Source: Lepidodermella squamata
Lineage: Eukaryota; Animalia; Gastrotricha
Direction: 5' to 3'
NCBI GenBank assembly: GCA_047495785.1
Contig: JBLDXI010000025.1
Coordinates: 186,001-250,000 of the forward strand
Length of the DNA stretch: 64,000 nucleotides
Every line of letters starts with the position of its first letter. Positions within the stretch are counted from its first letter, which is position 1. Below are positions 14,206 to 56,546 of this stretch, in pieces. The notes under the pieces were generated by a model. It had not been told where the DNA came from. It saw only the letters and a list, made by a program, of their open reading frames with translations, and made no database searches. Made by a program: the position numbers and the translations under genes.

Positions 14206-15045
14206 TCCCAGCTAGGGTCTCCAAGCTGGATAGCGTGGGCTACAAGTATTTCAAGAGATCACGTGATATCCCGTTTTGTGCTTCCAATCTGTCGACCGGT
14301 TTCACTATGGGAATAATACCTACTAGTCTAAAAGCGAAACTTAATGCTGTTAAATTTGTGTGTGAGCTGACCAGGTGCGATAATCCTTTAGTACAGGATG
14401 CTTTTTCTTTCTACTACCACTCTCGTCCTAAATTGGGTGTTCTTAACCCTATTCATGCAGCTCGAAATTTTCTTGTTTCTTACAATATAACACCTGACTT
14501 TTGGCTATTACGAGATCCAACCTTCATGAACCAGACTTTTAAGCTGGTCAAAGACGTTTACACCACAGAACTTTCAGTGAAGTTTCACCTTAAATACGAT
14601 AATACATATCTATTAGCTAAAAAAGGATACTTCGGTATTAGCAATATTTTCGAAAACTACCCGCCAGATTTACGTGCGACTGCTTTTCAAATTATCACTA
14701 ACACTATTTTTCGTCGTCTAGAGCACATTATTTTTAGAATCACCAAAGTTAAGTGCATGTATTGTGGCGATGATACACCTCTTAGACTGCTAGCATATCA
14801 TCTATCATACGAATGTGCGTCCTTAGTTAGTCATGATCCTGAAAGATTGCTCAGTTCCGACAATAGCATAGTCAAAAACACCTTGATTTTCTTTAAGCGC
14901 CTAATCAAGGCATTTAATTTGGCCATATAAACTGATGTCTGAGGATTGGCAAATTACCTCTGACAATAGGGCCATATTCTGCCCAATGATATAATTTGCT
15001 TCCTAGGGAACCTGAGGTTCCCTAGGTATGAGGGCAGGCAGGCAG
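14206..15045 (+). mobile_element. 5'-truncated non-LTR retrotransposon (LINE 3' end) with a 13-bp target-site duplication
   Basis: GATCATAATAGGT at 14193-14205 and 15046-15058. Open ORF 14235-14930 with a C-terminal CxxC..HxxxxC zinc knuckle (CMYC..YHLSYEC). Perfect 3' hairpin CCTAGGGAACC-TGA-GGTTCCCTAGG and a (GGCA)n tail. Confidence 0.85.
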
Positions 15046-15758
15046 GATCATAATAGGTGCGGATTAACTTCTGTTAACTTCTTAATCGAATCTGTCTGGG
15101 GCGGTACGTATAAAACTGTCGTTGTCTATATTAAGGGGTCGCTGGGATCAATTCAATATCATATTGTGTTCCTACGACCACTTTCAAGTTTGGTACAAGC
15201 TTGAATCTTCAAGTTGAGAAGATTGAACGGCCTCAGTAATCTCTTGAAATAATTATCATGACTTCGAGAGAATTAATGGCGCGACAACAATGCATCAGGA
15301 TGTGACTTTGATTAGTAAGTAGAGGGACTTCAGGCACTCTGACATGCCAAAGACGTTGGTTCATGACCAATCGAACGTAGGGTGTTCAAGACATCGTGAT
15401 TTGGGTACCTTTGGATTTGGGATACCTCGAGCAAACAAACCTGGATGTATGCAGTGTCATGCATTGCTGGATAAGAAATGACAATATTCCTAGAGGGAAG
15501 TTCTGAAAATATCATTTTTGCTATTCATGAGATGACATTGAGGCAATAGCTGAATAAACTGGTCACATTTTGAACTAAGATCCTTCCTGTGGAGTTCAAC
15601 CTAGAAACAACTAACCGAATTTTAACCGAGAAGGATGAATTTGCTGAACAATTTATTCTTGTTTAACAAAACTTGAATACTTGTGTATAGGGAGCGAGTC
15701 CACCTCCCATCTTCCCTCCCGGTCCCCTTACAACCGCGTAAGCGAACACGGAGTGTGT

Positions 15759-15900: not shown

Positions 15901-16856
15901 CCAAAATGAACAGCATCTACCAAGATGCGTTAGATGCGATCCATCAAGTACTCTTCAACTGAGAAGGCTGAAGAAATAAAAAGTCGGATGGTAGTTTCAA
16001 TCAATTTGTCACTTTATTCATTTATCATTCTCAAATCTGATTGTACAATAGCCGATATTTATCGTCATCATGCGGAAATAGCTTGAATAATTCAATACGA
16101 TAATGATGATATTTATAATGGTAATGATTGCAGCAACACTAAAGCAGTCATATTCGCGCATGTTTTCTACAGATAGGTATGGATGGTAAAAGAGTGAAGC
16201 TCAGAGCTTGTGGCAAAGATCTCGGTTGTTGATAATTAGCCAGCAGCTGATTTGTACACGACAACAACAACAACAACAAGAACGACAAGAACGAAATGAT
16301 AGATTTCGACAAACAAGCAAAGGAACAAGCGCGCGCAGGGTGGAACAAACAAACGAACAAGAAACGAATTATTTACTAGCAATTTTATTGACACTACAGA
16401 TGTTGGACTACACAGATGTTTGTTTGACAAATAATAATAATAATAATAAGATTGATAATAGTTGATACCACTACTATTACTAGAGGCGGTAGAAGAAGTT
16501 GAAAATTACGAATACCCACTGGATGTTTCGCAGAGTCATTTTCAGGCAGCCTGATTGTTTTGTGTTTCATTGATGCAGCACAGGATGTGAACAAGAACAA
16601 GAACAAGAACAAGAACGTTAAGTATTTGACAGACAGATGAAACAACAATAATTTACAACAATAAGAAGCAGCATTATTTTTTATTGCTTGAAACCAGCAA
16701 AACAATGTAGTAGAAATTTGGCGATTGAGGCGTTGCGTTTATCACAAGAAAACAGCAATGCAGAATTTCTCAGATCTCCGAGAAAAAGTGAATGAAAATA
16801 ACTGCTTTTTTCATCATAATTTCAGACATCTGAGTGTTTCAATAATTGATTAGCGA

Positions 16857-19140
16857 TCAAACTACAAGAACTTCGCGGCCGGCGAATGCATGCGAGCCAA
16901 CCATGCGTGGACTAGTTTGATACGCCTGTTTGCCATTGCTGTTATTCGGATCAGTATTCTGGCCGCCGTCATTCTGGCTATTGCTATTAGGGTCTTTTTG
17001 ATTCAACTCGAGGTGTTGCTTCAGGTGCTTGGACCTGATCTTCGACGCCGCGTCCATCGCCTCGGACGGCGACGACCGGCTGCGGAACAACTGCGACGCC
17101 GATGACGCCGACGAAGAGTCACTCGCCGTCGAGGTCGATGTTATCGACGGCGACGACTCGTCGATTTTGCACGGCGACGCCGATTTCGCGGCGATCAGGT
17201 AGTTGGTGGATGAGTAGCGGCGCTTGAAGTCGAACTTGCGGCGCGAATACCGCGTCTGGCGCGTGCCGAAGCACCGCTCGGGCCGCTTGTTCGGGTCCGT
17301 GTCGTCGTCCGAGTCGTCCTCGTTGTCCTCCGAGTGCGCGTGGCCCGAGTCCGACGACGAGATGAAGTGCGTCGACTCGGAGCCGAGCGACGACAGCGCG
17401 AGCGGCGACACGCTGTTCTCGAGCTCGGCCGCCTCCTCCGCCAGCGACACGATGTCCGTGCACGATTTCGCCGTCTGCTGCTGCTGGTGCAGATGATTGA
17501 GGGAGGTCGTGAATTCGACGACCCGCGCCGGGTCAGAGATGCAGACGCGGTTCTTGCGCAGCCGCGGCCGCGACGCGCCGTTCACGTCCGGCGACGCCTG
17601 CAGCGGCTTCGGCTGCTGCGGCGGCGGCGGCGCTGCGATCGCGTCGTCGGCGAGGCAGCACGTCGACTTGGACGGCGACGGCGACGCCTCGATGACGGCC
17701 GAGACGACGAGGCGGCGGGCGGTGGGCAGCTGCGGCGAGATGGTGTCGCTCGAGCGGAACTTGTCGCGGTGTTCCGGCTTGAGCTTGCGGCTGCTCGAGC
17801 CCAGCTTCGTGAGGCGCAGCTTCAGGCTCGACATTATCGCCCGGCCGAACGTTTTCGGCGCGGCCGCCGATGCGCTGCTCGGCGACGGCAGTAACGCGGC
17901 GGCTAAACCTATCGAGGAAAGAGAACAGGTTAAATGATAATTTCAAGAAGCTGTTCGCTTAATAATTTCTGAAACACCTGTATTTCGTAGGTAATTTTTC
18001 TCAATTTTTAAATAATTTGTTCAAAAAAGTAGTTCCAAGAAAGCTATTCGGCTTGAGAGAAGGATATAATTACGCCAAGGTTCCAAGATTTTCACAATTT
18101 GTTCACTGCATTGTTCACTTGCAAATTCATCTCATAGGTACGATTGGAACCTTAAGGAAATGGAACTGGAAGCCCGAAATTTGATGCTGCGATGTTCGAT
18201 CTTACGAGGCAATTTGAAATGTCATGAAAAGCAGAAGAGCTTGAAAAATTGCCAACGTGAACATGAAAAATCCGGAATGACCGGCCCAGCCAAGGAAAAT
18301 GCCGAAAATGGCCAAACCAGGATAGTGCATTGCTCCCATAAGTTGGGCAACCGTTTCCGATTTCGCATTTTATCGAAAATGTTTTCCCATTATTTGATGA
18401 TAACTGATCGGAGATTTTCGGTGTTTTACCCGGTTGGACCAAATCTCTGCGCATTTTATATTTCCTATAGCACGTTTCACACGAATTTGCTAAATTTGCC
18501 AAATCTAGCGAAATTAAACGCAGATATTTGTACTGATTTTTCATTGAATGGTTTTTCAAAATTTTAGTTTATCGAATATTTGTAAATTTCCGTTATACTA
18601 ACCTGGCGGCGTTGGGGTCGAAGCTGGTTGGAGTTGTCGGCGGGGCGGCGTGGGCACAGGCGCCAGTCGCAACGCCTGCGTCGCATGGGGCGGAGCACTT
18701 GCGGGAGTCGGCGAGCACGACGAACAGCTAATAGACACCGTAGTGGCTTCGGTGACTTTTTTGCGCAGCTGCGCATTCTCGACGCGCAGTTGCGCAATCG
18801 CCGCGTCCTTGGCGCGCAGGGCCGCGGCGACCCTCGCGGCGTCGCGGCGCAGCTGCCCGAGCAGGGTGACGAGCTCGGCGTCGGCGCGCCGCTTCAGCGC
18901 CTCGTTGTCGGCCTCGAGGCGCGCGGCGTGCGACCGCGACGCCGCCAGTTGCTTGCGCAGCGAGAAGATCCACTCGAGGAGGACGCGCGTGAGCACGGGC
19001 GGCGGCGGCTTCTTAAGCCCATCGCCGCTCGTCGTCGCCGCCGCTTTCGATTGGCCGACCACGTGGTCGTCGTCCAACACTTCGAATACCGTCGACTTCG
19101 AGGACGACAGCAAATCGTCGACGGTTATCGTTGCTGACAT
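16857..19140 (-). CDS. Uncharacterised coiled-coil/Ser-rich protein (about 530 aa); exons 18603-19140 and 16857-17908
   Basis: GC-rich open exons joined by a phase-1 GT-AG intron. Heptad segment LEWIFSLRKQL..LRAKDAAIAQLRVENAQLRKKV. Long AT-rich 3' UTR to about 16010. Further 5' exons are possible. Confidence 0.72.
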
Positions 19141-21461: not shown

Positions 21462-24456
21462 ACTTGGAACAGATGATGCTTGCACGGTTTTCTACGAGTA
21501 AATTCTAGGTTAAACCGCTGGTGTGAAACGTGCGAAATCGGCACTAATTTGACCTAATTAAATAATGTCAGTCGCGCGCTCAATTGCTAAATTTAAAAAC
21601 AGCAACGCACATTTCTGTTTTATTGAAGGGTAATAATGCCGCAAACAGCAAAAATCCCAAACCGGCGCAGAATTCTAAAGAACTTGAGAATCCGCTTTGG
21701 GAGCGGAGGTGAAAGAATAAAGAACTGAGCTCTTGACGACAAGAGAGCAGCAGTGGCGACTAAAATGAGCGATAATTGCCGTGTCGTGCAACACGTTGTC
21801 GTCGTCGTCGTCGTGTTTGTCGTGTTGCTGTGTCGGCGCGGCGCTTGCCGTCACTTAACCCCAAAGTGCAAACAGCAGCCGGGCCGCGCCGCGCTTCGAC
21901 GCCGGCGATACCACCGAGTTTAACACCGCAAACACGACAAACACGAAGATGATATCGTTGAGCGGCAACGCCGGCAAACACCAGTCGCGGCTAACACCAA
22001 GTGGAGGCGATGAGAACGAGGACAGCGGACGGCGCCGGATGAGCCCTCGCCCCCGTTGTCCTCACCCAGGAATGCGACACTGCGCACATTTCGCCTAAAA
22101 AATATTATCAGCTAAACGCTAAATTGTGGTCGCATTATTCCTTAATTATATCCTAGTTGCTACAGCGCAAGACATTTTACTAACACCAAAACAGCAAGTT
22201 CTGATTACGCGCAAGTTACCATCAATGTAAAAACCAGTCAGATGATAATTTTCTAATTTCTAACTTTTACGCATTAGCCAAACGCGCGACTAAATTTTTA
22301 TTACACGCGTTGCTGTTCGTCTGGGTCGGTCCGCGCATTTGGAAAACGCGCGTTTTTTTGGGGGTGTTTTGCGTTTCGCCGATGAAATCTCTACATTTAG
22401 AGGATGCGAATAAAGTTCCGAATGATTGGGAGAGTTATCCCCCGAAATTGCTCAATGTAATAAAAAAAAACAGGCAATGACTAGCTTGAATTGTGACTTT
22501 CTCTGATGAAAATGAAGGCAGTCAACGGCAAAAATAACACACGCAAACACAAACACAAGTAGGTATAGCTATCGGTGAATTTGTTGTTGTTGTTGTAGTA
22601 GTAGTTTTAATCATCATCAACTATAAGAAGAAGAAGAAGGAAGACTGACTGCAATACCTCTTTGCAAAAATCGACGGCATAAAAGGCGAGAAACAAATAA
22701 CACGCGTTTTGTTGATTGGCGGAAGGCGCGGGCGCGCAATTGATCGACAGCAGGCATTGTTTTTTTCACACCACAGCCACAACTGCCGAGTTGGAGGTGT
22801 TATTTTCCTGTTCTCTTGCGCCCCCAACTACAAATCACGCCAATTACGCCGATGTGATTCGCAAGCGCGCGTGATTTTCTCAAAAACTGCACCGCCAAAA
22901 ATGCTTATAAGCAAATGCAGCTTCCACAACTGGGTCAATTTCGCGAGTTTATTTTTTGAAGGAAGAAATGAACTAAGGAAGAGAAGATTTTTCTATCAAG
23001 GAATATTGTAAACGTGTTGAATTTAAGGCATAAATTCAGCTGAAGAGAAGGTTATTTCCTATGACACCAACGAGAATCAGAAAATCCAAATTAAAGCCCG
23101 AATACTTTTACAGAGCTGGAAACGCAAGATTGAAAATTGAGTGCGCGCAAGAATGTTCAAAAAACAAGGTTTGTGTTATAGCTGCCATTTCGGAGAAACT
23201 TGAGACGAGGTATCGCAGAATATCAAAATCGAAACTAAAAAATGCATTTATAGCCTGCCCAATGATGTAGAGCTGATAGTTCTGGGCGAGAAAAAAATAA
23301 GGATAAATCTTGGAACAAGCGACCAGTGATGATGCGGTTTCAGGTGAGTAAATTCGAGGTTAAACCGCATATCTGCTGGTGTGAAACGTGCGAAATCGGC
23401 ACTAGTGCCAACCTTGGTCCTACATTTTTTCAGGCTGGCCATCACGTTGGCCAAACAGTAACCGGCCCAACACTGCGCGCGCTGCTGCCCGGGATGTTTG
23501 CCCGCTGCTTCATATCACATACAGGTAGGTAGGTAGGTATAGGTAGTAGTGACTGGCGAGCGGGCGCGAATCGCTACGGCAAATACCTGTAGCAGCAACA
23601 CACAGCACTCTCATAGCCGCGGCGTCTTTTTTAGCGGCTCCTTATCCACATGGACCACGACGATAAAACCGTAAGAACGGACGCATCATCATCATCATCG
23701 TCATCAGCGGGAGGCTGCGCGCGGGAAGAAGAGCAATCGGCATCGGGCAGCGGGCACGCGCTCGGCAGCAAGCGCAGCACGTGCGATCGTCGCACAGGCA
23801 AACACGCCCAGCCCATGTGGACATTCTAAACAACTACGCTAAGTGGCGTCTTATTTGCCGAGCGCGCGTCGTCTTTTTACGTCCGAGAACGATGAGCTGT
23901 GCTGGCCTCTAATAGCCGCTTAATAGGCGGCGCATGAAACGAGAAGCCGCCTAAGAATAAGCAGCGCAAAAAACCAGTGGCTGGCTGGCTGGTCGCGGTT
24001 CGTCGGCATCGTCATCATCGCCAGCACAACGACGAAAAAAACAATAACAATTTCACGCGCGCGCGTATGAGGTGTTCGCTGCTAAATCGACACTCAATAA
24101 TTGCTAATTGAATGAACCGAGAATTTTCCTATTCTGCAGCCTATTCCTTCCTCCTTATTCTTCCAATCTTACCTTAAATAGAAAGATGTTCTGGTATTAC
24201 GAGTCACTGACGCGAATCAAAATGCGACAATAAATGTAAATTTTAAAATTATTAAGCCTCTATTCGTGTTGCCAAGTGTAGATGCCAAGTGCTACAGAAA
24301 AAGAGCGATTTCGACTCTGTGGCTGTTGCTGTTTGAGGGCCTAAAAAGCCGAGCAAAGGACCGTTTTAAACAACAAATGACGTAGATTGGGCTTTTATTG
24401 ATAGCAATTAACGCACGCGTTTTACTCGTCTGGGTCAGGTCCGCGCATTTGAAAAA
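21462..24456. repeat. Two short dispersed repeat pairs in non-coding DNA (21462-21546 with 23309-23404; 22304-22346 with 24414-24456)
   Basis: Shared cores GAGTAAATTC.AGGTTAAACCGC..GCTGGTGTGAAACGTGCGAAATCGGCACTA and TCGTCTGGGTC(A)GGTCCGCGCATTTG. Confidence 0.7.
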
Positions 24457-27414: not shown

Positions 27415-29994
27415 ATGGGCATAGGTTTAGACATTTCTTTACTGGCGATCACTCTCCTACAATTCAGCTATGCAGCGAAGCCGAGGCTCTTGTGGCCGGG
27501 ACTCATGGGTATATAATATTAGGTAATATAATGTAGGGTATGTATAATATTGTAAGCTCGATATAACAGACCCCAGTCAAAACGCCCTGCTAGAACACGT
27601 CAACATGTCCGGGGTCGTTTTGGCGAATTTCGAAATCGTACCTCATGGAATTACTGCCGAAGATGACGACTATCTTAACAGATACGCAAGACTATTGTCG
27701 GAAATGGATCTGCCAAACAACACATACCTGGCACCCGTCATGACTGGTCCAAATGGAAATTGCGACTATTCTGCAGGGACCTATCGGGCAATCAATATGG
27801 TCATGGTAAGGAATTTTAAGTTTAATAAGGATTCCATGGGTTAATTTCGACTCGTTTGAATTGGCATTTTCCCTTCAAAATGTGCTGACTGCATATCATT
27901 TATAAGTTTCGCAATATTTTACATTAAGCTTTATTTTACAAAATTATAAGAATTTATCTTCGCCCATTTCATTCCCTTCAAATGAATCAGATTTCCCAAA
28001 GCTGCGCTGGGCCTTTTATCGAATCGCGAAGATCTAGGTTCTACAACAACCTGTATACAACACTAGGATCGGTTAGCTCGTACAAATATGCGATTTTCCA
28101 CGCTATCAAATCGATCGGCGATTGGAAACGCGTCGGAATGGTGTACTCTTGGTACCTTCGCGATGTCCCAATGCTAGCCGATGAGACTTTCAAGCTTCTG
28201 ACAGCGAGCAACATTGAAGTCAGCGAATTCGTCAGTGTTTACTGGTTTGGGGATTTGCAAGACGCTGATTTGCAACCCTTGCAAAATGTCAGAATTATCA
28301 TGGTATTCCCCTACGGCGCCTGGGAATGCCAGATATTTTTATGCAAGGCCTATCACAATGGCATCAGACCGCCGTTGTACCACTTCATTGTATCGATACC
28401 AGCTTGTTTGACATGGAACTTGGAGCGAGATGTCTCCATGTCAAAAACTTGCACAAGAGAAATTGTGGACATTCAACTGTCAGCGTTGTTTGCTATCGGA
28501 ATTCCGTTATATCCGTTTGATATGCCGAAGCAATCCAGTCTCGGAATGAGCCCTTCAGAATACGACATTTTGCTGAAAGCGAAGTACGTCGAGGTGGGAT
28601 GGCCTCCTGTTTTAGGTATTTCTCGCTACGGTGAGCATGATGGTTATATGTTTACACTGCTCGTCCTGAACAAAACTGAATCTTCGTTGAATCAGCAATA
28701 CAATCTGTCACTGAGTGACTTCAAGAATCCGACATACCAACGCTTGATATACGAAGTAGCTAGAAGAAGTGCTTCGGAGCTCGAAGCAGTTGGATTTCGA
28801 AATCCTAGAATCAAGCGAGATATCAATGGTGAGATGTACCAAGATTTATCAATAATGCAAGCTTACAAGTTGCAACCTCGCCGAGTGGCCCATCTACCGT
28901 ATGACTATGAGAAGCATAACTTTCCATTCCTTATTGACGATGGGCCAATATGGGCTACGAAAACGGGACTCCCTCCGAGAGATCTCACAAACATTGAGAT
29001 AAGAATCGGACATTGCGGCAGCATTTTGCGCGGCATTGTAACTTGTTTAGCGATATCTCTAACTTTGATTCAGAGTCTCCTACTCTTAGCGGCAACTCAG
29101 GCTAAACCTGAGATGTTCTACAGAAATTGGAAGAAGAGCTTTGTTTTCGTCTCCTGTTTAGGCCTTAATACATCGGCCATCTTCCTGGTCATAGGCCATG
29201 ATTATTCCCCGACAACTGAGTGCAGGTGGAAAATAGTTTCGATTTCGATTAGCTTGAGCATGCTTCACAGCCTTATTTTCAGCCAAATTTTCGTCTACAG
29301 CAAGTTCGTTCGGGTTAGGACCTACCGGGTCTACAATCGAGCTATCCGTTATATTAACCACCTTGTGAAATGGAGATGCTCTTTCAGGACGGGTCCTAGT
29401 GATTCTTCGTACGAGATAAAAGGTATCTTTATTCAGAATCACGTTTCCACGCTCGTAAGTGACAGGTATAAAAATGAACTTCAAATGTCGCAAGCTCTCA
29501 GCGTAACATTGGCTATGAATGTGATTGCACTGCTTCTGTGGATCATCAAGGAGCCAATGCAGTTATTTTTCTATCGGAATCCGGTTGCGTTCGACGAAGT
29601 AGCGGATACGTATTTTGAGCTCGATGTCACGTTCTGTAGTTCAGAGAATATTAGCTACTGGCTCGGAGCCGTCCTCACGTTCAATTTCGGACTTCTATTA
29701 CTGGCGAATATGTTTTCACTCGACCTGAGGCGTCGCACCATGCCTAATGAATTCGCTCTGAGTTGCAAGCTAATCAGAGTAGCGGCGGTGAATGCCCTGA
29801 CGATGCTAGCAGCCAGTGTTGTTGTGCTTGTCTTGGTGACAAAGTCCAACAAGCCATGCTTGGTTAACGCAGTATTGGCTTTTATCGAGCTGGTATATTC
29901 TGGGATAATGAGCTTCGTTTTGTTGCTGCCTGTTACTGTGAAAGTTGAAAAGCTCGATGCAGCTGTAAGCTTGGGTAATTCGAATGATACGTGA
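27415..29994 (+). CDS. Divergent class C GPCR, GABA-B-like (Venus flytrap plus 7TM, no Cys-rich domain), copy 1; exons 27415-27508, 27570-27805, 27991-29994
   Basis: Signal peptide; ANF-receptor-like GDWKRVGMVY and FLCKAYHNGI; linker WATKTGLPPRD; seven hydrophobic segments with ECL2 CSSENISYW. Confidence 0.8.
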
Positions 29995-30202
29995 TTTCGA
30001 AAACTATTTTCAGTATCGTTATTATATCCGTTCAAGAAATTTTTGTACATCATAACTCGTCATTGGTCAAAAGCTCAGATCTATCGAGCTGGAACTGACT
30101 TCACCTGGAACATAGTTCTTTAATAAAACAGAAAGTTTTATAATTTCATTGAAAGTATTTAGATATAGATTATAAGAGAGTTCTGGCTGTTTTCTCGTCT
30201 GG

Positions 30203-32453
30203 CTACATACTAGTCCGGGTTTGCAGGGTGACCTAGATGAATCATCCTCAGTTGTTTATTGCTAGCTATCATGTGTGCAGTACTTCTATGTTTAGGCGGT
30301 GGTGGTGCGGTGGTGAGGTGGTGAGGTCGCGCTATCGCGCTGTTCGCTTTTTTGCTCTCCGTTTATTTTCAAATAATTTTGCAATCATTCGATAGCTGAA
30401 TGCGATTAAGACGATCTTAATAATTCAGAGCCGAGAATTGTCAAAAAAACGTCAGAAAGCTTTTGAAAGAGAGATGAACAGTCAACAGTCAACCTAATAC
30501 ATTTTTTACTAATTTTCACACTTAATTTGTTTAATTAATCAGATAACTATTTTTTATTGAAGTAAAAATTTACAACTAATTTATTTAGCAGGGTTCCGAT
30601 TCCTACTGACGGGGTGCGCAGACAGCGGGGATGCATATATCGGGTAGCACTGAAAATCGTTGAGAAATTAGTGCTTAAATTCATGTAATAATCATGAAAA
30701 ATCGAAAATCAGAAAGAGTTTAAGGTATATTTTCACACTTCGCGAATAAATCAAAGTGTAAATTATTTTGACCGTTAATAACAGCATGGAGGCCGCTGCG
30801 ATTAATTTTCCTGATTTTCGAGAAAGGAATAAGTAGTCAGCGCGAGGATTTTACTATCCGCTAAGCGGCGCGGATAACCCTCATACTTAGCGACACCCCA
30901 GGTGTCTCATTGATGGCGCCTGCTAATCGCTGGTAGGGGCGGTGATTATTGGAGTCACCGGCCATTTTTCAGGATGCGGCCTTTATGCTGTAGTTTCGGG
31001 TTCACAAATAATGAATCATGCAGTCATGAAAATGTTGGGGTCCGAGTCCAAATTCTGCGTTCATGCGTTCAGGCCGGCCGGTACGCAGACGGATAGCATT
31101 GATTTGCCGCTCCGCGTTCGGGCCGCTTTCAAAGATGCCCGTGTGTGACGTTTACTGTAAGGTTAAAAATTTCGAAAGATTCACGCTTCACTACACACGG
31201 TGTTAGCCCGAGCACGCCGGAGAACAAAGGAAACCGCAGCGCTATTGCTCAGCGCCGCAGTCAGGCCGCCGGGCTTGGGTCATCCTACAACCATCTCGAA
31301 GGGTACCCGATAAATGTATCAAGTCCCAGCCCAAACCCGGCGGCCTGAGTACGGCGCGCTCGAGCGCCTAACAATGGCACTGGTTTCCATTGCTCTCCGT
31401 CGTGGTCAGGCCAACACATTGGCCGGCTCGTGTGCAGTGAAGCATGATTCTCTCGAATTTGTTAAACTTACAGTAAAGTTCGCATACGGGCACGTTATAG
31501 ACCGGCTCGAGCGCGGAGTGGTAAAGTGCTTTCACCCGGCCGCGTACGGGCTGAAATCGGTCTCGGGCTCAATCAAAAACACGGAATACCTTTCAGCAAC
31601 AACATCAGAGCTTTCTAAATCCCAATATCGATTTGAAGCGTCTCCGCGATGCCGATGGTCTCGATGCGTACTCTACAATTAACTTCACCGATTTTATCTA
31701 CGCGCTGTTACCATTTTTAGAATCGTTATATGCCCCTATTTCGCTCACGATTGCCGATTTTGCAGATGAGCAACGCCCATCAACACTATGGGATTCACCG
31801 TATTCGGTGTTTGATCGACACAACCGCAAAATATAGGCGGCTGGAATTTTGTTGGTGGTGGGAAATCATCATTCGAATATCTCCTTGGTTTTGGTTTCAT
31901 GTCAGCTTAGGTCACAGTTGCGTCTTCACGAAAGCTTCGTCTATCATTTCAAGCAATAACTTGTGTGAGCTAATTAGGCTCCAAGTTCATTATTGTGATT
32001 TTTGAGTTTATGAGAAATATTTATGGAATTCTCGTGAAAACCATGAAAACCATGCAACCCGGCGATCGCTGGTTGCAATTTTTTAATATTGCTGGTAATC
32101 AAATTTGAAAAATTCAATTTTTAATTATTTTCATCAACTACGCGCAGTATGCAGCATCATCAATTGTATGTATAATTCATAGGGTCCTTATCCCGGCTTC
32201 GACTGGGTGCTTCGGCGCCCGAAGCCATTTTGTACATGACACCACAGTGGTATAGATGACGCGAGTGACATCGTGCGTTAATAAGCGGCTGATTTTGGCT
32301 GACAGGCGCGTTGCTGGTAATAAAACCTCACGACCTCACCACCACACCACCGCCACCATCTAAACTTGCAAGTACTGCACACATGATAGCTAGCAATAAA
32401 TAACTGAGGATGATACATCTAGGTCACCCTACCAAACCCGGACTAGTATGTAG
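30203..32453. mobile_element. Non-autonomous TIR element (about 125-bp terminal inverted repeats), non-coding interior
   Basis: CTACATACTAGTCCGGGTTTG..AGGGTGACCTAGATG.ATCATCCTCAGTT.TTTATTGCTAGCTATCATGTGTGCAGTACTT at 30203 is mirrored at 32324-32453. GTCTGG direct repeat at 30197-30202 and 32454-32459. Confidence 0.88.
30590..32320 (+). ncRNA. Candidate large structured non-coding RNA inside the TIR element
   Basis: Nested stems with G-U pairs on the plus strand (for example 30781-30796 with 30976-30991), a cUUCGg hairpin at 32205-32220, and no ORF with recognisable similarity. Transcription is not shown. Confidence 0.5.
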
Positions 32454-33564
32454 GTCTGGCTGAAATCGTTGCTTTACGAAGGATATCATGCATAATTTTA
32501 TGAGGCATCTCTTCATTCGTGTGAGCTGCGATGTGCTATAACCATACATGGTGTTCAAGAAACAATAGGTGGTTATAAATAGCTACTTTTGGCACGCCAT
32601 TCCGCGTTTTCGAGCTACAAGCTGGATATATTATTTAACAAACACCCCGTATAGAGAAAACATAAGAACAAACTTCGAAAAAACTGAGGAAAAAGCAGGG
32701 GTCGAATCTAAGACCTCCGGGTTGAGGCCCATGAGGTGATACCGAAGTACCTATGCAATAAAGCCAAGTAACGGGGTTGTGCGGCAATTTTGCGCATCTG
32801 ATTAACACTCAGTCGCACAACTTTGATCCTGCAAAGCCGAATTATAATGCTCCCCTGGCAGCTGCTCTTTTGGTCTGAAAGCAACAAACAATATACAAGC
32901 CAAGACATACATCGGGCCCGGTTTTAGTTTTTGGCAGCCCCGTTGTGACGCAAAAGCGCGCGGCGAAAAATCGCGAAACATTAGTCAAGCGTCAAGCAAG
33001 CACGTCAGGGCAATGAAGCGATGAGGATCCAACAAGGGAAGGGAGCCGCGGTCGGCGGAGACAAAGGGCCAAAACTGGGTTGCTCAAGAGCCCCAAGAGA
33101 GCAGCGGGTTGTGGAGCCTGAGGCTGTGGTGCGGCCGTAAATGAGCTCCAGCTGAGCATACCGATGTGCAGCATATGTGGCGGGAAGAGCATGGAGTCAA
33201 GCCTCGAAATCAACGGCAACATCCTCGAAGGATGAACTCGACCCCACCGGCCCTTCCGGACGGGGCAGCAGCGAGAACCGGCAGAGCAACAACAAGGATC
33301 GGTTCGAGCAACTGGCTGTGGCGAGGAGCAGGTCCATCGGAACCAGCAGAGGAGGCTAGTCTAGGACCTAGAAATTGGATGGCAGACGAAATAAAGCGGA
33401 AAATATATACAAGCATATCACGGGTCGAATCGCGATGTACAGATTTACCGAAATTTAGCCGTCACGAAAAGATAAACAAAAAGCGACACGGGATCGGTGA
33501 ATGCTCTTTGGTTGTTTCTATCATAACACGGATGTCATAGGTATATAAAGATCCACTAGGTGCC

Positions 33565-33830
33565 GATCTCTACTGTAGTTCTACCGTAGTTCTATCGTAG
33601 CGAAAGCATTGCCGTTGAGTAGGGTACCGCAGTGGGAAAATAAATAAGAAAGGATGGTAGCTAATGAGATTTGAACCTTCTATCCCAGTTTTTAGAATTC
33701 TAGTTTCCAAACAAGGCAGTTTTTCGAAAATTCAATTGCTAGTTTTCAAGAGAAGAAAGTTTTAATCGGAAAACTACGGTACCGTATCGGTAGAATCGGT
33801 AGAACTAAGGTAGAAATACGGTGGATATCG
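33565..33830. mobile_element. MITE-like element with inverted arrays of (TTCTACCGTAG)-type repeats
   Basis: CTACTGTAGTTCTACCGTAGTTCTATCG on the left is mirrored by CGGTAGAATCGGTAGAACTAAGGTAGAAATACGGTGG on the right. Confidence 0.55.
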
Positions 33831-34099
33831 TATACGGTGAGCCGTAGGTAATCAGGTAAGCGCAGGTGAGGGAAGGTAAGATACAAAGGTTGGAGCCACC
33901 TACGGCTTTTGGAGCTTCATCAGGGCGGTCTCAAAGCGTTACGACAAATGTTCTAAAAATGGCTTCATACTTTTCTAGTAACGATCTTATCCTCCTTGAA
34001 TTCTTGCTTAGAGTGGTCATCGCTGACCATAAACGTCTATGCCACGTATTCGCTTTCTGTTGCTGTTGTTGTCAACTGCCTGAACTATAGTATACGCCA

Positions 34100-34214
34100 A
34101 CTCCGTACCACCGTACCGCCAACACGCCGTTGTAGTACTGCACACATTATACTTAGCAATAAAAACGACAAGGACGATTTATCATAGTCACTATACGGAC
34201 CCCGGACTAGTATG
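34100..34214. mobile_element. Solo diverged terminal repeat of the same family as the 30203-32453 element
   Basis: Shares AGTACTGCACACAT, TAGCAATAAA and terminal CCGGACTAGTATG at near-identical spacing. Confidence 0.8.
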
Positions 34215-34482
34215 AACATCTCCCGACTCGAGACTTGGCTTGCTGATCACTGATCCCCTTTACTTCGGTAAGACGTTTTTTCTCAAATATCGCTGATTCC
34301 TCACCCAAACACCCCAGACCTTGAATAGTACCCGGAACTGTCAGCCTACGTTGTGCAATTACGTCAGCAAACTATGCGTGGGACATTCGCGGCTGTATCC
34401 TGTGCATGATCTCTTGTATCGTTTATATGCGATTCAATCGCAGCATCGCTTTCCATTTTCTGATATCACTATAAGCTATAAG

Positions 34483-37212
34483 ATGGCAACACTACTGATA
34501 ACTATTCTGTTTCTTCTCTCGAAAATCGCGCAAGGATTCACGCAAACAAAAACTGCTATGAATGCGTCTATACCACAGAGAGTCACCGCCACTGGCTACA
34601 ATGCGAGCAGTAAAACCGTCAGCATACCGCTGTCTTGCAACTACGCTGGTTTCACGAATTCGCTCGGTCCAATATGTACGGAAGGTATCCGCTACGCTCT
34701 AGACAGCCTCAAACGAATGCCCAACTTTCTGACCGATATCGAGCTGGTAATTGATCCAATTGACGACGTGGTTAGTTTGAAATGGACTAATAACTATTCA
34801 AGATTTTAAAATATAATTCACTTAAAGTGCAACGAACCAACAGCTATGCGCAAGTTCTTTGCGGAAATGTCAGCGAACGAATTCGCCAGCGACCGTCTGC
34901 CCATCTACCTATTTGCATCGTGTTCGGTTCACTACGGCCTAGCTCAAACTCTGCAACACTTCAATGTCATCAGCGTGAGTTACATTTAATCGATATATCT
35001 TTATTCAATCAGTTTAAAGCAATCATTGCTCCTAAAGCCATTTGGGAGGCGTCGGTCCCATTCTTCTTTTTCTAACTGCTATATGAAGTTTGATTCCACG
35101 GTGAGGGATTAGGAACTACTTCAAATTAACAAACCCCGAAAACTTCCAGAAACATGACGCAAGGCAGTTTTCTAAAATATAATTACCCAAATATTCTAAA
35201 TATTCCATTCTGTACTCCTTCTGTTCCAGTTCGCACCGTACTCTGTCCCGTTGGAAATATTTACGAGACGAGGGCGTTATCAAAACTTTTTTGTGACCTT
35301 ACCTTCACTTTACGATACTCAAATGTCTATCGCAGAACTTATGTCAGTGTTGAATTGGCGCAAACTGGCCATAATTTCAGAAATTAAAGATACGACCCTG
35401 ATTTCCGACAGCAGCTTCATCAGCCTCATCGAGAAGAGGTACAACATCACTTCATCCGGGCTGTACAAAATTCCGTTGCTAAACGGCCCTTTACCAGATT
35501 CAGAGAGCATTCGAGGAGCAGTGGAAGAGATGAGTAAAAGCGATCATAGAATCATCCTGCTGTTCTCAGCTTCATCTGTTCGAATAGCTTGCTGGCTTCA
35601 TCGTTACAAACTCTTTGGGCCTAATTATGTAATCTTTGCATCAACTCTTACGGCTTTTAATCCGAATGACCCGTTGAGATTCTCGCCCTGGTGCACTGAG
35701 GCAATGCTCACGGATGTTTTGCAAAGTTTCATTGTCTTCGGATACTCGAGCATGATGGCTCTTGATCAAATGGAGGCGATAGACTCTTTCGGGAATTCCG
35801 GATCAGATTTCGATAAAACGTTGTTGTCTCGAATTGACAATCCTCAAATGCGGAGTGGGTGGTCTCAGCGCCATTACTGCTACGACAGTGTTCTTTTTGC
35901 ATCTCATGTACTCAATGCTACTCAGGAATTACTTCGAAGAGAAAACCAATCCCTGACAGATTGGCTTACTAATAGCGAGAGATTTCGAACTAATGGATCG
36001 TCGATGGTAGCGAAAATGAAGGAAGCCTTATTTTCGACTAGAATCTCTAGCAAAATTGGAGATATTGGCTTCGAGAGAGAAACCACTCTGAATACAGGTG
36101 GCAATGCGATTTTGGGGGTTTTCCAGTACCAACCTGTTCCAGGAGCTCAAAATAATTTGAACTTGATCCCAATCGCTGTATTCAACAGCCGTAGTCGGAA
36201 AATCGATTTTATTCCTGGAAAAATGAAGTGGCAAACCAAAACAGGTTTAGCTCCGTTAGATTCATTGAAAATCATCGATGTTGCTCCGCCGCTGCTCTCC
36301 TTCGATGCGTATGTTACAATAACAGTTTTCAGCTCGCTAGGACTCGCAATCTCTCTGATTCTATCAATTCGTTCGAGCGGTCGTTGGAAATCTTCCGCTT
36401 CAATATTTCTGTTTGTCGGAAGCGCTTTTCTTACGATTTCAAACTTGGTTTTACCTCTAATTCCCATGGCGAAAATGGCCGCCCATTACACGGCCTCATT
36501 CTCGTTTCTACTTGTTGGCGTTGAATTTATATTGCTGGGGCTAATGTTGAAGCTAGAAGTCGCACATATATCCGCACTTCTCCAGATTCAAGCGCAAGGC
36601 GGTAAAAAGAGAAATGGCGATATTTTGACCGTTAGTACTTTCTCTCAAAAATCGAAAGCAAGTAAAATCTCTTCTCGAACGAAGGAAATAACAATGAAAT
36701 CTAGCATGAGGAAATTATACGTATCATTCGCTGTTCTAATAGCAATCAGCCTAGTACTTCTTTTGGTTTGGTTCACGGCGGAACCCATTGAAACGTATTC
36801 AATTAGTGGTCAGCCAACAATCTCGCCAGATGACAACTCAATTGCTTATAGGGATATCACTCACCTATACCGCCTGGGATTGACAGCTAACATCATCATC
36901 GGTCTGTTTTGTTCCACATTCACTGTTCTGATCTTACGAGGAACCTTTTTAGCTTTCGTGCTAAGAAACGTAAGTCCTTTGTCCTTTATGCGCTTGTTTC
37001 ACAGTTTCTGTTTCCAGATCAAGACTGAAGCAATAAATGATTTGCAGAAGGTAGTCAGATGCTTCTACGGAGTTATCCTTCTCCTTGTAGCCGGATTGGT
37101 CATTGGCAAGGCAATTTTCAGTGATCAAGACGATCAGAGGATCGCAATATCTATCATGAATTTAGCAAACGTTGCAATAGTCGTCGGATTTTTCTTCCCT
37201 AAGAGTACCTGA
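34483..37212 (+). CDS. Divergent class C GPCR, GABA-B-like, distant paralog; exons 34483-34770, 34828-34974, 35230-37212 (probable extra 48-nt in-frame intron near 36970)
   Basis: Signal peptide; FLTDIEL..DDVCNE; LNWRKLAII; linker WQTKTGLAPLD; 7TM ending FFFPK. Confidence 0.8.
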
Positions 37213-55545: not shown

Positions 55546-56236
55546 TTTTTCGTTCTCTTCATGTAGATAGGATGAAGCCTGCCAGTTTATCTGATGTGCT
55601 GCGATTCATTCGTAGCGCCTCTTCTTGTTATTATATTTTTCTGTGTTCTCCAGTGTAGCATCGTTTTCGCGAGTTACGATGCAAAACGGGTATTTGAATC
55701 AAATGCTGCGATTATAATGAAATAAATATAAAAGAATCCAATGAAATGGTCAATTTTTTCGCAATTCATAAATGGTTATTTGCCTCGCGAGTCTTTGTAT
55801 GCTTGTGTTATCGCTTCTCGTTGAGAGAGAAGCCCAAGAAATCGCCCGAAGGCTCATTGAATGTTCCCACGCACGGAAATCTTTAGTAAAAGGCGAAAGA
55901 TTTGTTCGTTTTGCGCGGAAACCAGAGTAATTAGACGACTGTTTTTCAAACATTTGGACCTTGCCGATTCAAGGTCAGGCGAGTGGCTCGTGTCATTTGA
56001 ATATTCATCTGTCAATTGCGCATTTCAGCTTCATCATCTGCTCAATAGTTTGAAACAGCACGAACTGGTGCTACTAAATTCGTCGGCTAGCTATTTGCCT
56101 ATTGAAACGAAAGCGAGACTAACCGTTCGACAAATGCTTGCAACAACCTACTCAACCGTCAAGTTGCTCGGGCCAGACGGCGGTGCTGAAGGAAAATCTG
56201 CCGGCAGTAATGCACTCTGCGTCTGAGACCACATCT

Positions 56237-56310
56237 GGCCGCTTAGCTCAGTTGGTTAGAGCGTCGTGCTAATAACGCGAAAGTCGTGAGCTCGATCCTC
56301 CCAGTGGCTA
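56237..56310 (+). tRNA. tRNA-Ile(AAT), T arm degenerate (possible pseudogene)
   Basis: GGCCGCTTAGCTCAGTTGGTTAGAGC, anticodon arm TCGTG-CTAATAA-CGCGA. The T loop reads CTCGATC and the T stem is mismatched. Confidence 0.7.
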
Positions 56311-56338
56311 CACGATGTTTTTGGCTTTTGGCTCTATA

Positions 56339-56454
56339 CAGGGCGTTCGCGTAATAATACTCTGCTAAAAATAGCTTTACTACTTTTTGCATTCGTTTTA
56401 GCTTTTTTGTAGCTATTTTTAGCTCACCCAGAGTATTATTACGCGAACGCGCTG
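56339..56454. mobile_element. Tc1/mariner-type MITE with TA target-site duplication
   Basis: TA-CAGGGCGTTCGCGTAATAATACTCTG ... CAGAGTATTATTACGCGAACGCGCTG-TA. Confidence 0.85.
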
Positions 56455-56546
56455 TACTGAGAGGAGACTCTATACAGGAAAGTCAACAAGCGGGCGTTCA
56501 ACAAGCACATTTTTTATTCCAAAAAATTGCAGAAAATCGTAAGATT

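What the first reader, a model, noticed from the sequence alone, without database searches (positions are those of the whole stretch)
30203..32453. TIR-bounded mobile element whose only cargo looks like a ~1.7-kb highly structured RNA
Seen: about 125-bp TIRs enclose an interior with no recognisable ORF but dense nested pairing. One multibranch domain is closed by ACAGCATGGAGGCCGC (30781-30796) with GCGGCCTTTATGCTGT (30976-30991; two G-U pairs). It contains TAAGTA/TACTTA > GAGG/CCTC > TATCCGC/GCGGATA, plus GACACC/GGTGTC and CGGTGATT/AGTCACCG. Further hairpins include CCCAT/ATGGG, CACCG/CGGTG, TGGTGGT/ATCATCA, TTTATGAGAA/TTCTCGTGAA, TGCAACC/GGTTGCA (32053-32077) and GGCTTC..GGGTGC-TTCG-GCGCCC-GAAGCC (32195-32226). 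Non-Watson-Crick positions in these short stems are mostly G-U on the plus strand. Established: cUUCGg is an exceptionally stable RNA tetraloop, and strand-specific G-U pairing indicates selection on RNA rather than DNA structure. Inference: a DNA-transposon-like vehicle carrying a large functional ncRNA (ribozyme, guide/scaffold or silencing decoy). I could not match it by eye to rRNA, group I/II introns, RNase P/MRP or small ribozymes. This is the best candidate for an undescribed system in the window.
Basis: partly seen in the sequence, partly recalled or inferred. Interest (0 to 1): 0.85.

Follow-up and report, generated by a model that had tools for sequence, protein, structure and literature searches.

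The report
Ordinary passenger transposon, no RNA cargo
This is a real 2.25-kb jumping element with matching inverted ends and no gene of its own. Its "highly structured RNA" interior is mostly a patchwork of other repeats, including one large DNA palindrome, so it is an ordinary non-autonomous transposon and not a new RNA-carrying system.

Summary
The element is real. TIRs of about 125 bp (30203-30329 / 32325-32453, 89% alike) are flanked by an exact direct repeat, GTCTGG. A third, diverged TIR lies at 34103-34216. There is no ORF over 122 aa, no Pfam match and no Rfam family.

The claimed 1.7-kb structured RNA does not hold up. Folding beyond dinucleotide shuffles occurs in only two blocks, and on both strands alike:
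- a 574-bp palindrome (31032-31605; z -16/-14)
- a 211-bp block closed by inverted repeats (30781-30991; z about -5/-5)

The other 1.2 kb folds at background level (z +0.3 and -1.0 on the plus strand). G-U pairs show no significant strand bias. The two G-U pairs in the closing stem are private A-to-G changes of this copy. Contigs of the one public run that holds the locus show that the interior parts match very different numbers of look-alike contigs (2-3 up to 39), so the interior is a mosaic of repeat families. Segment B has a mild plus-strand excess of short hairpins, but several other spots in the same window equal or exceed it.

Verdict: an ordinary non-autonomous cut-and-paste transposon lying between two class-C GPCR-like genes. 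Transcription and covariation could not be tested. The scan's earlier notes hold no look-alike of this element on other DNA.

The parts
30197..30202 (.). Left copy of the flanking direct repeat GTCTGG, the putative 6-bp target-site duplication. The alternative reading is a TA duplication at 30204-30205 with the element starting at CATAC (30206).
   Evidence: Read directly. The exact repeat recurs at 32454-32459.
30203..30329 (+). Left terminal inverted repeat, about 125 bp. Its inner part (30295-30329) consists of GGTGGTGAG-like subterminal repeats.
   Evidence: It is 89% identical to the reverse complement of 32325-32453.
30330..30780 (.). Segment A: AT-rich non-coding filler. A sub-stretch around 30547-30562 matches 9-12 other contigs.
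   Evidence: Fold z is +0.27 (plus) and -2.5 (minus).
30781..30991 (.). A 211-bp block closed by a 16-bp inverted repeat and holding several short palindromes. It belongs to a multi-copy repeat whose homology runs beyond the block on the left.
   Evidence: z is -5.4/-4.3 and -4.9/-5.1. Six or seven other contigs cover 30779-30788. The G at 30788 and 30789 is private to this copy, and other copies have indels in the stems. A TTTTT run at 30965 lies inside the block.
31032..31605 (.). A 574-bp palindromic (foldback-type) repeat with arms of about 250-275 nt and its centre near 31304. It is a member of a high-copy family.
   Evidence: Searches give the arm alignment: 190 Watson-Crick pairs, 10 G-U on plus, 14 G-U on minus. 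z is -16.0/-14.1. Up to 39 other contigs cover 31428-31533. The weak mir-769 hit on its centre scores 31.6 bits against a gathering score of 57.
31606..32324 (.). Segment B: non-coding and low-copy (summed depth about three times that of the exact-match contigs).
   Evidence: z is -1.0/-1.6. Hairpin counts are, individual hairpins. One diverged contig copy has 99 other letters in place of 32089-32213.
32325..32453 (-). Right terminal inverted repeat.
   Evidence: An X1 contig spans 32385-33921 with 0 differences, so the right junction is present in the reads.
32454..32459 (.). Right copy of the flanking direct repeat GTCTGG.
34103..34216 (-). Solo, diverged TIR of the same family (73-77% identity) in right-end orientation, with no partner in the window. 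Its homology to the element's TIRs begins exactly at CATACTAGTCCGGG.
27982..29994 (+). Upstream neighbour: a 670-aa ORF resembling class-C GPCRs (7tm_3 / ANF_receptor). It is a multi-copy gene family. Its stop codon lies 209 bp before the element.
   Evidence: feature score 0.95 to 7tm_3/ANF_receptor clusters. One search shows 7-10 diverged contigs. Pfam gives nothing.
35251..37212 (+). Downstream neighbour: a 653-aa ORF with a weak ANF_receptor match and transmembrane segments. It is probably a paralogue of the upstream gene.
   Evidence: PF01094, E 8e-5, below the cut-off. The sequence is shown.

Best explanation
A non-autonomous class II (cut-and-paste) DNA transposon of 2,251 bp sits in the spacer between two tandem class-C GPCR-like genes. 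It encodes nothing. A transposase made elsewhere by an autonomous relative would move it, by recognising the ~125-bp TIRs and their GGTGGTGAG-type subterminal repeats. That step is inferred, because no autonomous copy could be searched for. The interior is non-coding filler built from unrelated repeat families. These include a 574-bp foldback palindrome of a high-copy family and a 211-bp multi-copy block closed by inverted repeats. The conspicuous 'RNA structure' is the self-complementarity of these DNA inverted repeats, plus the ordinary scatter of short hairpins. The superfamily is unassigned. The ends read either as 5'-CTACATAC with a 6-bp duplication, or as 5'-CATAC with a TA duplication.
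For: Shown:
- TIRs and flanking duplication.
- A third family TIR 1.65 kb away.
- No ORF over 122 aa and no Pfam hit even at E<=1. No translated similarity to the rest of the window apart from the TIRs.
- Fold excess limited to two blocks and alike on both strands.
- Palindrome mismatches unbiased by strand, 10 against 14.
- G-U counts of 68 against 56 track the G+T content.
- Very unequal numbers of look-alike contigs along the interior: 2-3 at 30441-30464, 9-12 at 30547-30562, 6-7 at 30779-30788, 12-13 at 31130-31161 and 19-39 at 31428-31533. No position of segment B appears among the best-supported differences, and 2 contigs show small indels there. 4 contigs lie on the TIR.
- The closing-stem G-U pairs are private transitions, and other copies have indels inside stems.
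- No Rfam family at gathering score.
- Eight runs of at least five T on the plus strand, one of them inside the 211-nt domain, argue against a long Pol III transcript.
Against: - Segment B has more short plus-strand hairpins than its shuffles (12 against 4.5, 0 of 300 shuffles), while its minus strand does not. The 211-nt block shows 5 against 1.
- The 211-nt block is truly unusual for this region: z is about -5, and the flanking background never falls below -2.9.
- No target-site duplication was found around the palindrome or the 211-bp block, so 'nested insertion' is inferred from copy number, not proven.
- Contig depth is not a clean copy number.
- No RNA data exist, so transcription is not excluded.
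Confidence: 0.85

Rival explanations
1. The element carries a functional structured non-coding RNA, read from the plus strand. It would be either the 211-nt multi-hairpin block or segment B. The TIR vehicle would spread this RNA gene.
For: The domain folds at z -5.4 on the plus strand. Plus-strand hairpins are in excess in the domain (5 against 1.1 expected) and in B (12 against 4.5) but not on the minus strand. The cUUCGg-capped hairpin has z -3.4 on plus and -1.4 on minus.
Against: - The minus strand of the domain folds equally far beyond its shuffles.
- B as a whole has z -1.0.
- Equal or stronger asymmetric hairpin hot spots occur about every 10 kb in the same window.
- The G-U pairs of the closing stem are private mutations, and other copies carry indels in the stems.
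- No Rfam family matches.
- T-runs interrupt the plus strand, one of them before the domain's 3' closing strand.
Confidence: 0.05
2. The 574-bp palindrome acts as a long-hairpin precursor. If it is read through from the upstream gene or an internal promoter, it folds into about 250 bp of imperfect double-stranded RNA and is diced into small RNAs that silence the high-copy family it belongs to. This can be true alongside the main explanation.
For: The hairpin energy is very strong on either strand, about -293 kcal/mol with z about -15. The family is high-copy, with up to 39 contigs. A weak, sub-threshold match to a miRNA-precursor model falls on the centre. From established knowledge, foldback and MITE hairpins are known sources of endogenous siRNAs and miRNAs in plants and animals.
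Against: There is no RNA evidence at all. The arms are only 68-74% paired by blastn and the repeat finder, about 80% over the gapped local alignment, and carry several indels. The Rfam hit is far below its gathering score (31.6 against 57).
Confidence: 0.12
3. It is not a mobile element. The inverted repeats would be a chance or rearrangement product, such as a local inverted duplication.
For: Only one full copy could be read. No empty site was available.
Against: An exact flanking direct repeat is present. A third, diverged copy of the same terminal sequence lies 1.65 kb away. Further contigs in the read set carry TIR variants (4 at 32366), and there is a diverged copy of B plus the inner TIR edge (record 6).
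Confidence: 0.02

Closest known systems
Non-autonomous class II DNA transposons (Ds-type or '-N' families, large MITE-like derivatives)
   Same: Long TIRs with subterminal short repeats, a flanking target-site duplication, no transposase, a non-coding interior unrelated to any gene, and a small family with diverged ends.
   Different: No autonomous partner has been identified. The superfamily is unassigned because the duplication length is ambiguous (6 bp or TA).
The CATAC-ended, 2-bp-duplication CMC/Mirage-like transposons that earlier notes of this scan report in the same genome (s1-431970, s1-430020, s1-365904)
   Same: The part of the terminus conserved among all three TIRs starts with CATAC, and TA lies directly outside it on both sides of this element.
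   Different: Here a 6-bp exact direct repeat lies three bases further out, and the TIR complementarity extends through those three bases.
Superfamilies with 6-bp duplications: IS3EU/GingerRoot, Polinton, Dada
   Same: A 6-bp duplication (PMC10045372 gives it for IS3EU, GingerRoot and Polinton). From memory, Polintons also have TIRs of 100 bp or more.
   Different: IS3EU has TA..TA termini (PMC10045372), which are not met here at any register that keeps a 6-bp repeat. Dada inserts in small-RNA genes (PMC3706591), whereas this target is a gene spacer. No Polinton genes are present.
Foldback or palindromic MITE families, and hairpin-RNA loci derived from them
   Same: The 574-bp internal palindrome is high-copy, non-coding, and decays symmetrically on both strands.
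   Different: No terminal duplication could be found around it, and no small-RNA data exist.
OMEGA systems (TnpB/Fanzor with omega-RNA)
   Same: The idea of a transposon that carries a structured guide RNA next to its end.
   Different: No nuclease ORF is present. There is no fold excess next to either TIR: the 200-nt windows beside and overlapping the right TIR (32100-32399) give z -1.4 to +0.9 on either strand, and the plus strand beside the left TIR gives about 0 to +0.7. The only dip is -2.6 on the minus strand of 30300-30499, within the range of the flanking background.

Membership tests
Class II TIR transposon, non-autonomous | Terminal inverted repeats | tested here: met
   About 125 bp at 89% identity, with the terminal 21 nt perfect.
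Class II TIR transposon, non-autonomous | Target-site duplication directly flanking the ends | tested here: met
   GTCTGG lies on both sides. The alternative register gives TA. The length is therefore ambiguous.
Class II TIR transposon, non-autonomous | More than one copy in the genome | tested here: met
   A third TIR lies at 34103-34216. Four TIR-variant contigs and a diverged contig of B plus the inner TIR edge are in run X1. The family is small.
Class II TIR transposon, non-autonomous | No transposase of its own | tested here: met
   The longest ORF is 122 aa and overlaps the palindrome. Nine ORFs give no Pfam hit at E<=1.
Class II TIR transposon, non-autonomous | An autonomous relative with the same TIRs, or an empty site | not testable with these tools
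   The genome is not searchable here. Metagenome and viral scans found nothing. The organism's proteins are absent from the protein collection.
Structured non-coding RNA gene | Match to a curated RNA family | tested here: not met
   No Rfam hit at gathering score. The best is mir-769 at 31.6 of 57 bits, on the palindrome.
Structured non-coding RNA gene | Fold stability beyond shuffles, stronger on the transcribed strand | tested here: not met
   A +0.27/-2.5, domain -4.9/-5.1, palindrome -16/-14, B -1.0/-1.6.
Structured non-coding RNA gene | Compensatory changes among copies | tested here: inconclusive
   Only fragmentary variant tables were available. They show that the closing-stem G-U pairs are private A-to-G changes and that other copies have indels in the stems. 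No alignment of copies could be built.
Structured non-coding RNA gene | A discrete transcript | not testable with these tools
   No RNA run holds the locus.
Nested MITE or foldback element (31032-31605) | Long inverted arms, non-coding, many copies elsewhere | tested here: met
   Between 19 and 39 other contigs lie on the right arm.
Nested MITE or foldback element (31032-31605) | Own target-site duplication marking an insertion | tested here: not met
   No direct repeat flanks 31032/31605 or the better-aligned core. The ends are too diverged to place.
OMEGA (TnpB/Fanzor) element | RuvC nuclease ORF next to a structured RNA at the transposon end | tested here: not met
   There is no such ORF and no Pfam hit. 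Fold z beside both TIRs stays within the range of the flanking background.
IS3EU | TA..TA termini with a 6-bp duplication | tested here: not met
   With ends set at TA (30204 / 32452), the flanking hexamers are TCTGGC and GGTCTG, which differ. The criterion is from PMC10045372.

The most novel reading that the evidence does not exclude
The 211-nt multi-hairpin block closed by an inverted repeat (30781-30991) is itself a multi-copy unit. It, and perhaps the hairpin-rich segment B, could be transcribed from the plus strand as a structured RNA that hitch-hikes on DNA transposons. That would be a non-coding 'passenger RNA gene' spread by cut-and-paste elements in this animal.
Probability: 0.04. 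Interest if true: 0.6.

Novelty: new member of a known kind. Interest (0 to 1): 0.1.

Why it matters
It matters little beyond annotation. The finding adds one small family of non-autonomous DNA transposons, and a high-copy foldback repeat, to the repeat catalogue of a poorly sampled animal genome. The useful lesson is methodological. Self-complementarity inside transposons mostly reflects nested DNA inverted repeats. Eye-picked G-U pairs on one strand are not evidence of RNA-level selection unless both strands and the genome's own background are scored.

Tried and rejected
- Rfam, permissive on the element and at gathering score on the whole window: nothing in the element.
- ARAGORN: no tRNA in or beside the element.
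- Pfam on nine interior ORFs at E<=1: nothing.
- Six-frame pieces against the rest of the window by tblastn: only TIR matches, so no captured fragment of a local gene.
- Exact-pattern scans for the TIR core in metagenome contigs and in viral contigs, and for the palindrome arm in metagenome contigs: 0 hits.
- Search for an allelic or orthologous empty site through the neighbouring GPCR-like protein. The exact look-up found nothing, and the homologue search returned nothing at E<=1e-20. The organism is not in those collections.
- Earlier scan notes searched by sequence for the TIR and the palindrome: blank.
- Shared words between the U5 snRNA upstream region and the element, as a snRNA-type promoter test: no word of 10 nt or longer. 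A- and B-box scans gave only weak matches with 1-2 mismatches.
- Target-site duplications around the palindrome and the 211-bp block: none convincing.
- Registers of 3, 8 and 9-10 bp for the element's own duplication. The 8-bp GTCTGGCT register works only if the left end is two bases shorter than the right end. The 3-bp and 9-10-bp registers fail.

Full report
**What is there.** The stretch 30203-32453 is bounded by inverted repeats of about 125 bp. By blastn these are 30203-30327 against 32453-32325, with 89% identity over 129 columns. The terminal 21 nt are perfectly complementary. They occur only at these two places in the window, where 0 matches are expected by chance. The inner part of each TIR is a run of GGTGGTGAG-like short repeats. 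An exact hexamer, GTCTGG, lies directly outside both ends at 30197-30202 and 32454-32459.

A third copy of the terminal sequence lies at 34103-34216. It is 73-77% identical, sits in right-end orientation and has no partner in the window. Contigs of the one public run that holds the locus (X1) cross the right junction without a difference (32385-33921). I take this as a true insertion of a small TIR-transposon family.

**End register.** Two registers fit the ends:
- 5'-CTACATAC ends with a 6-bp duplication. This is favoured by the exact hexamer and by TIR complementarity that runs to the first base.
- 5'-CATAC ends with a TA duplication. This is favoured because homology with the third TIR is 14/14 from CATAC inward and 1/3 outside it. 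Unchecked earlier notes of this scan also report CATAC/CATA-ended elements with 2-bp duplications in this genome.

I could not decide between them with one full copy. The superfamily stays open. IS3EU (TA..TA ends plus 6 bp; PMC10045372) fails at every register.

**Coding capacity.** The longest ORF in the element is 122 aa and lies on the palindrome arm. Nine ORFs give no Pfam match at E<=1. Six-frame pieces match nothing else in the window except the TIRs. The element is non-autonomous.

**Context.** The 670-aa ORF that ends 209 bp upstream (27982-29994) resembles class-C GPCRs by language-model features (score 0.95, all top clusters 7tm_3/ANF_receptor). The 653-aa ORF downstream (35251-37212) has a weak ANF_receptor match. 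The element therefore lies in the spacer of a tandem receptor gene family, which is itself multi-copy in the reads.

**Is the interior a highly structured RNA?** I scored folding against dinucleotide shuffles on both strands, in three ways.

Sliding 200-nt windows from 27 kb to 35.7 kb gave background z between about +2.4 and -2.9. Inside the element only two places stand out: 31200-31399 (z -7.0 plus, -8.8 minus) and 30700-30999.

By segment, plus/minus z-scores are:

| Segment | Coordinates | z plus | z minus |
|---|---|---|---|
| A | 30330-30780 | +0.27 | -2.5 |
| Palindrome | 31032-31605 | -16.0 | -14.1 |
| B | 31606-32324 | -1.0 | -1.6 |
| Flanking control | 32470-33188 | -0.1 | not obtained |

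The tool's 200-shuffle run gives the domain -5.4 on plus and -4.3 on minus.

The excess is therefore confined to two blocks that are self-complementary as DNA and fold equally well on either strand. About 1.2 kb of the claimed 1.7-kb RNA folds like shuffled sequence on the plus strand.

**G-U asymmetry.**
- In the palindrome, 10 mismatches would be G-U on plus and 14 on minus.
- Over the four segments, G-U pairs in the MFE folds number 68 on plus and 56 on minus. The differences follow the local G+T content, which is 55% in the domain and 53% in B.
Seven other contigs carry A at 30788. The loose-end consensus of two contigs ends in AA just before 30790. Either would pair as A-T with 30984/30983. 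These G-U pairs are private transitions in this copy of an originally better inverted repeat. They are not a conserved RNA feature.
- Other copies show a 12-nt skip (30828-30841) and a 4-nt insertion (behind 30832) inside the TAAGTA stem, and a shortened 30950-30972 region.

I counted short hairpins (at least 7 bp, at most 2 G-U, loop 3-14). Segment B has 12 on plus against 4.5 +/- 2.2 in shuffles (0 of 300 reach it) and 5 on minus. The domain has 5 against 1. Against the window's own background this is the upper tail, not an outlier. Of equal-sized tiles, 1.9% reach 12. Four or five other places have equal or higher counts with equal or stronger strand asymmetry: 14.8-15.5 kb at 15 against 1-3, 16.4-17.5 kb, 18.7-19.1 kb, and 23.3-23.8 kb at 2-4 against 12-13. 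I read this as local composition, not selection.

**Mosaic interior.** Laying X1's contigs at 80% likeness or more put 504 contigs on 5.7 kb. The two exact-match contigs have depths of 63 and 79. The number of other contigs that differ from the window at a given place varies more than ten-fold along the interior:

| Place | Other contigs |
|---|---|
| 30441-30464 | 2-3 |
| 30547-30562 | 9-12 |
| 30779-30788 | 6-7 |
| 31130-31161 | 12-13 |
| 31346-31418 | 8-14 |
| 31428-31533 | 19-39 |
| TIR (32366) | 4 |

No position of segment B appears among the best-supported differences, and 2 contigs show small indels at 32023-32034. Summed depth follows the same pattern: about 210-230 over B, about 350 over the TIRs, and about 6,600 over 31374-31564. 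Depth is not a clean copy number, so I rely on the contig counts. The parts of the interior belong to repeat families of very different size.

I did not find duplications around the palindrome or the 211-bp block. That they arrived by insertion is therefore inferred.

**Known RNAs and transcription.**
- No Rfam family reaches its gathering score in the element. The best permissive hit is a miRNA-precursor model on the palindrome centre, at 31.6 bits against 57.
- There is no tRNA in the element.
- The plus strand has eight runs of at least five T. One of them (30965) lies inside the 211-nt domain before its 3' closing strand, so a long Pol III product is unlikely.
- No RNA run holds the locus, so expression is untested.

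**Limits.** The genome itself cannot be searched with these tools.
- Metagenome and viral scans for the TIR core, and a metagenome scan for the palindrome arm, were blank.
- The neighbouring protein has no homologue at E<=1e-20 in the protein collection.
- I could therefore build no alignment of copies, run no covariation test, find no empty site and look for no autonomous partner.

**Verdict.** The observation of a TIR-bounded, ORF-less element is right. The interpretation as a vehicle for a large structured RNA is not supported. It is most likely (0.85) an ordinary non-autonomous DNA transposon whose filler is a patchwork of repeats, including a high-copy foldback palindrome. A by-product role of that palindrome as a hairpin small-RNA source is possible (0.12, not exclusive). 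A dedicated structured RNA cargo keeps about 0.04-0.05.

Noticed in passing
window 8928-9831: A tight cluster of six tRNA genes (Arg-ACG, Lys-CTT, Val-AAC, His-GTG, Ser-GCT, Asp-GTC) on mixed strands, spaced about 90-100 bp apart.
   Followed up: no
window 55813-55930 (-) and 56237-56311 (+), 56332-56461: A U5 snRNA gene (94 bits) lies about 300 bp from a tRNA-Ile gene. Directly after the tRNA lies a 130-bp hairpin-like inverted repeat with 33-nt arms, 91% complementary. It may be a small MITE.
   Followed up: no
window 27982-29994 and 35251-37212: Two long single-exon ORFs on the same strand look like very divergent class-C GPCRs (7tm_3 / ANF_receptor-like). The first has no Pfam hit and no homologue at E<=1e-20 in 5.8 billion proteins, yet 7-10 diverged paralogous contigs appear in the reads. 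This looks like a lineage-specific expanded receptor family.
   Followed up: partly
window 14800-15500, 16400-17500, 18700-19100, 23300-23800: These spots have strongly strand-asymmetric excesses of short G-U-tolerant hairpins, for example 15 against 1-3 around 15 kb and 2-4 against 12-13 around 23.5 kb. The cause was not examined. The 21-26 kb region holds (GAT)n-type runs.
   Followed up: no
window 32582-32629 and 33716-33738: Short stretches in the unique flank are covered by 3-6 extra diverged contigs. Small interspersed repeat fragments are therefore scattered outside the element too.
   Followed up: no
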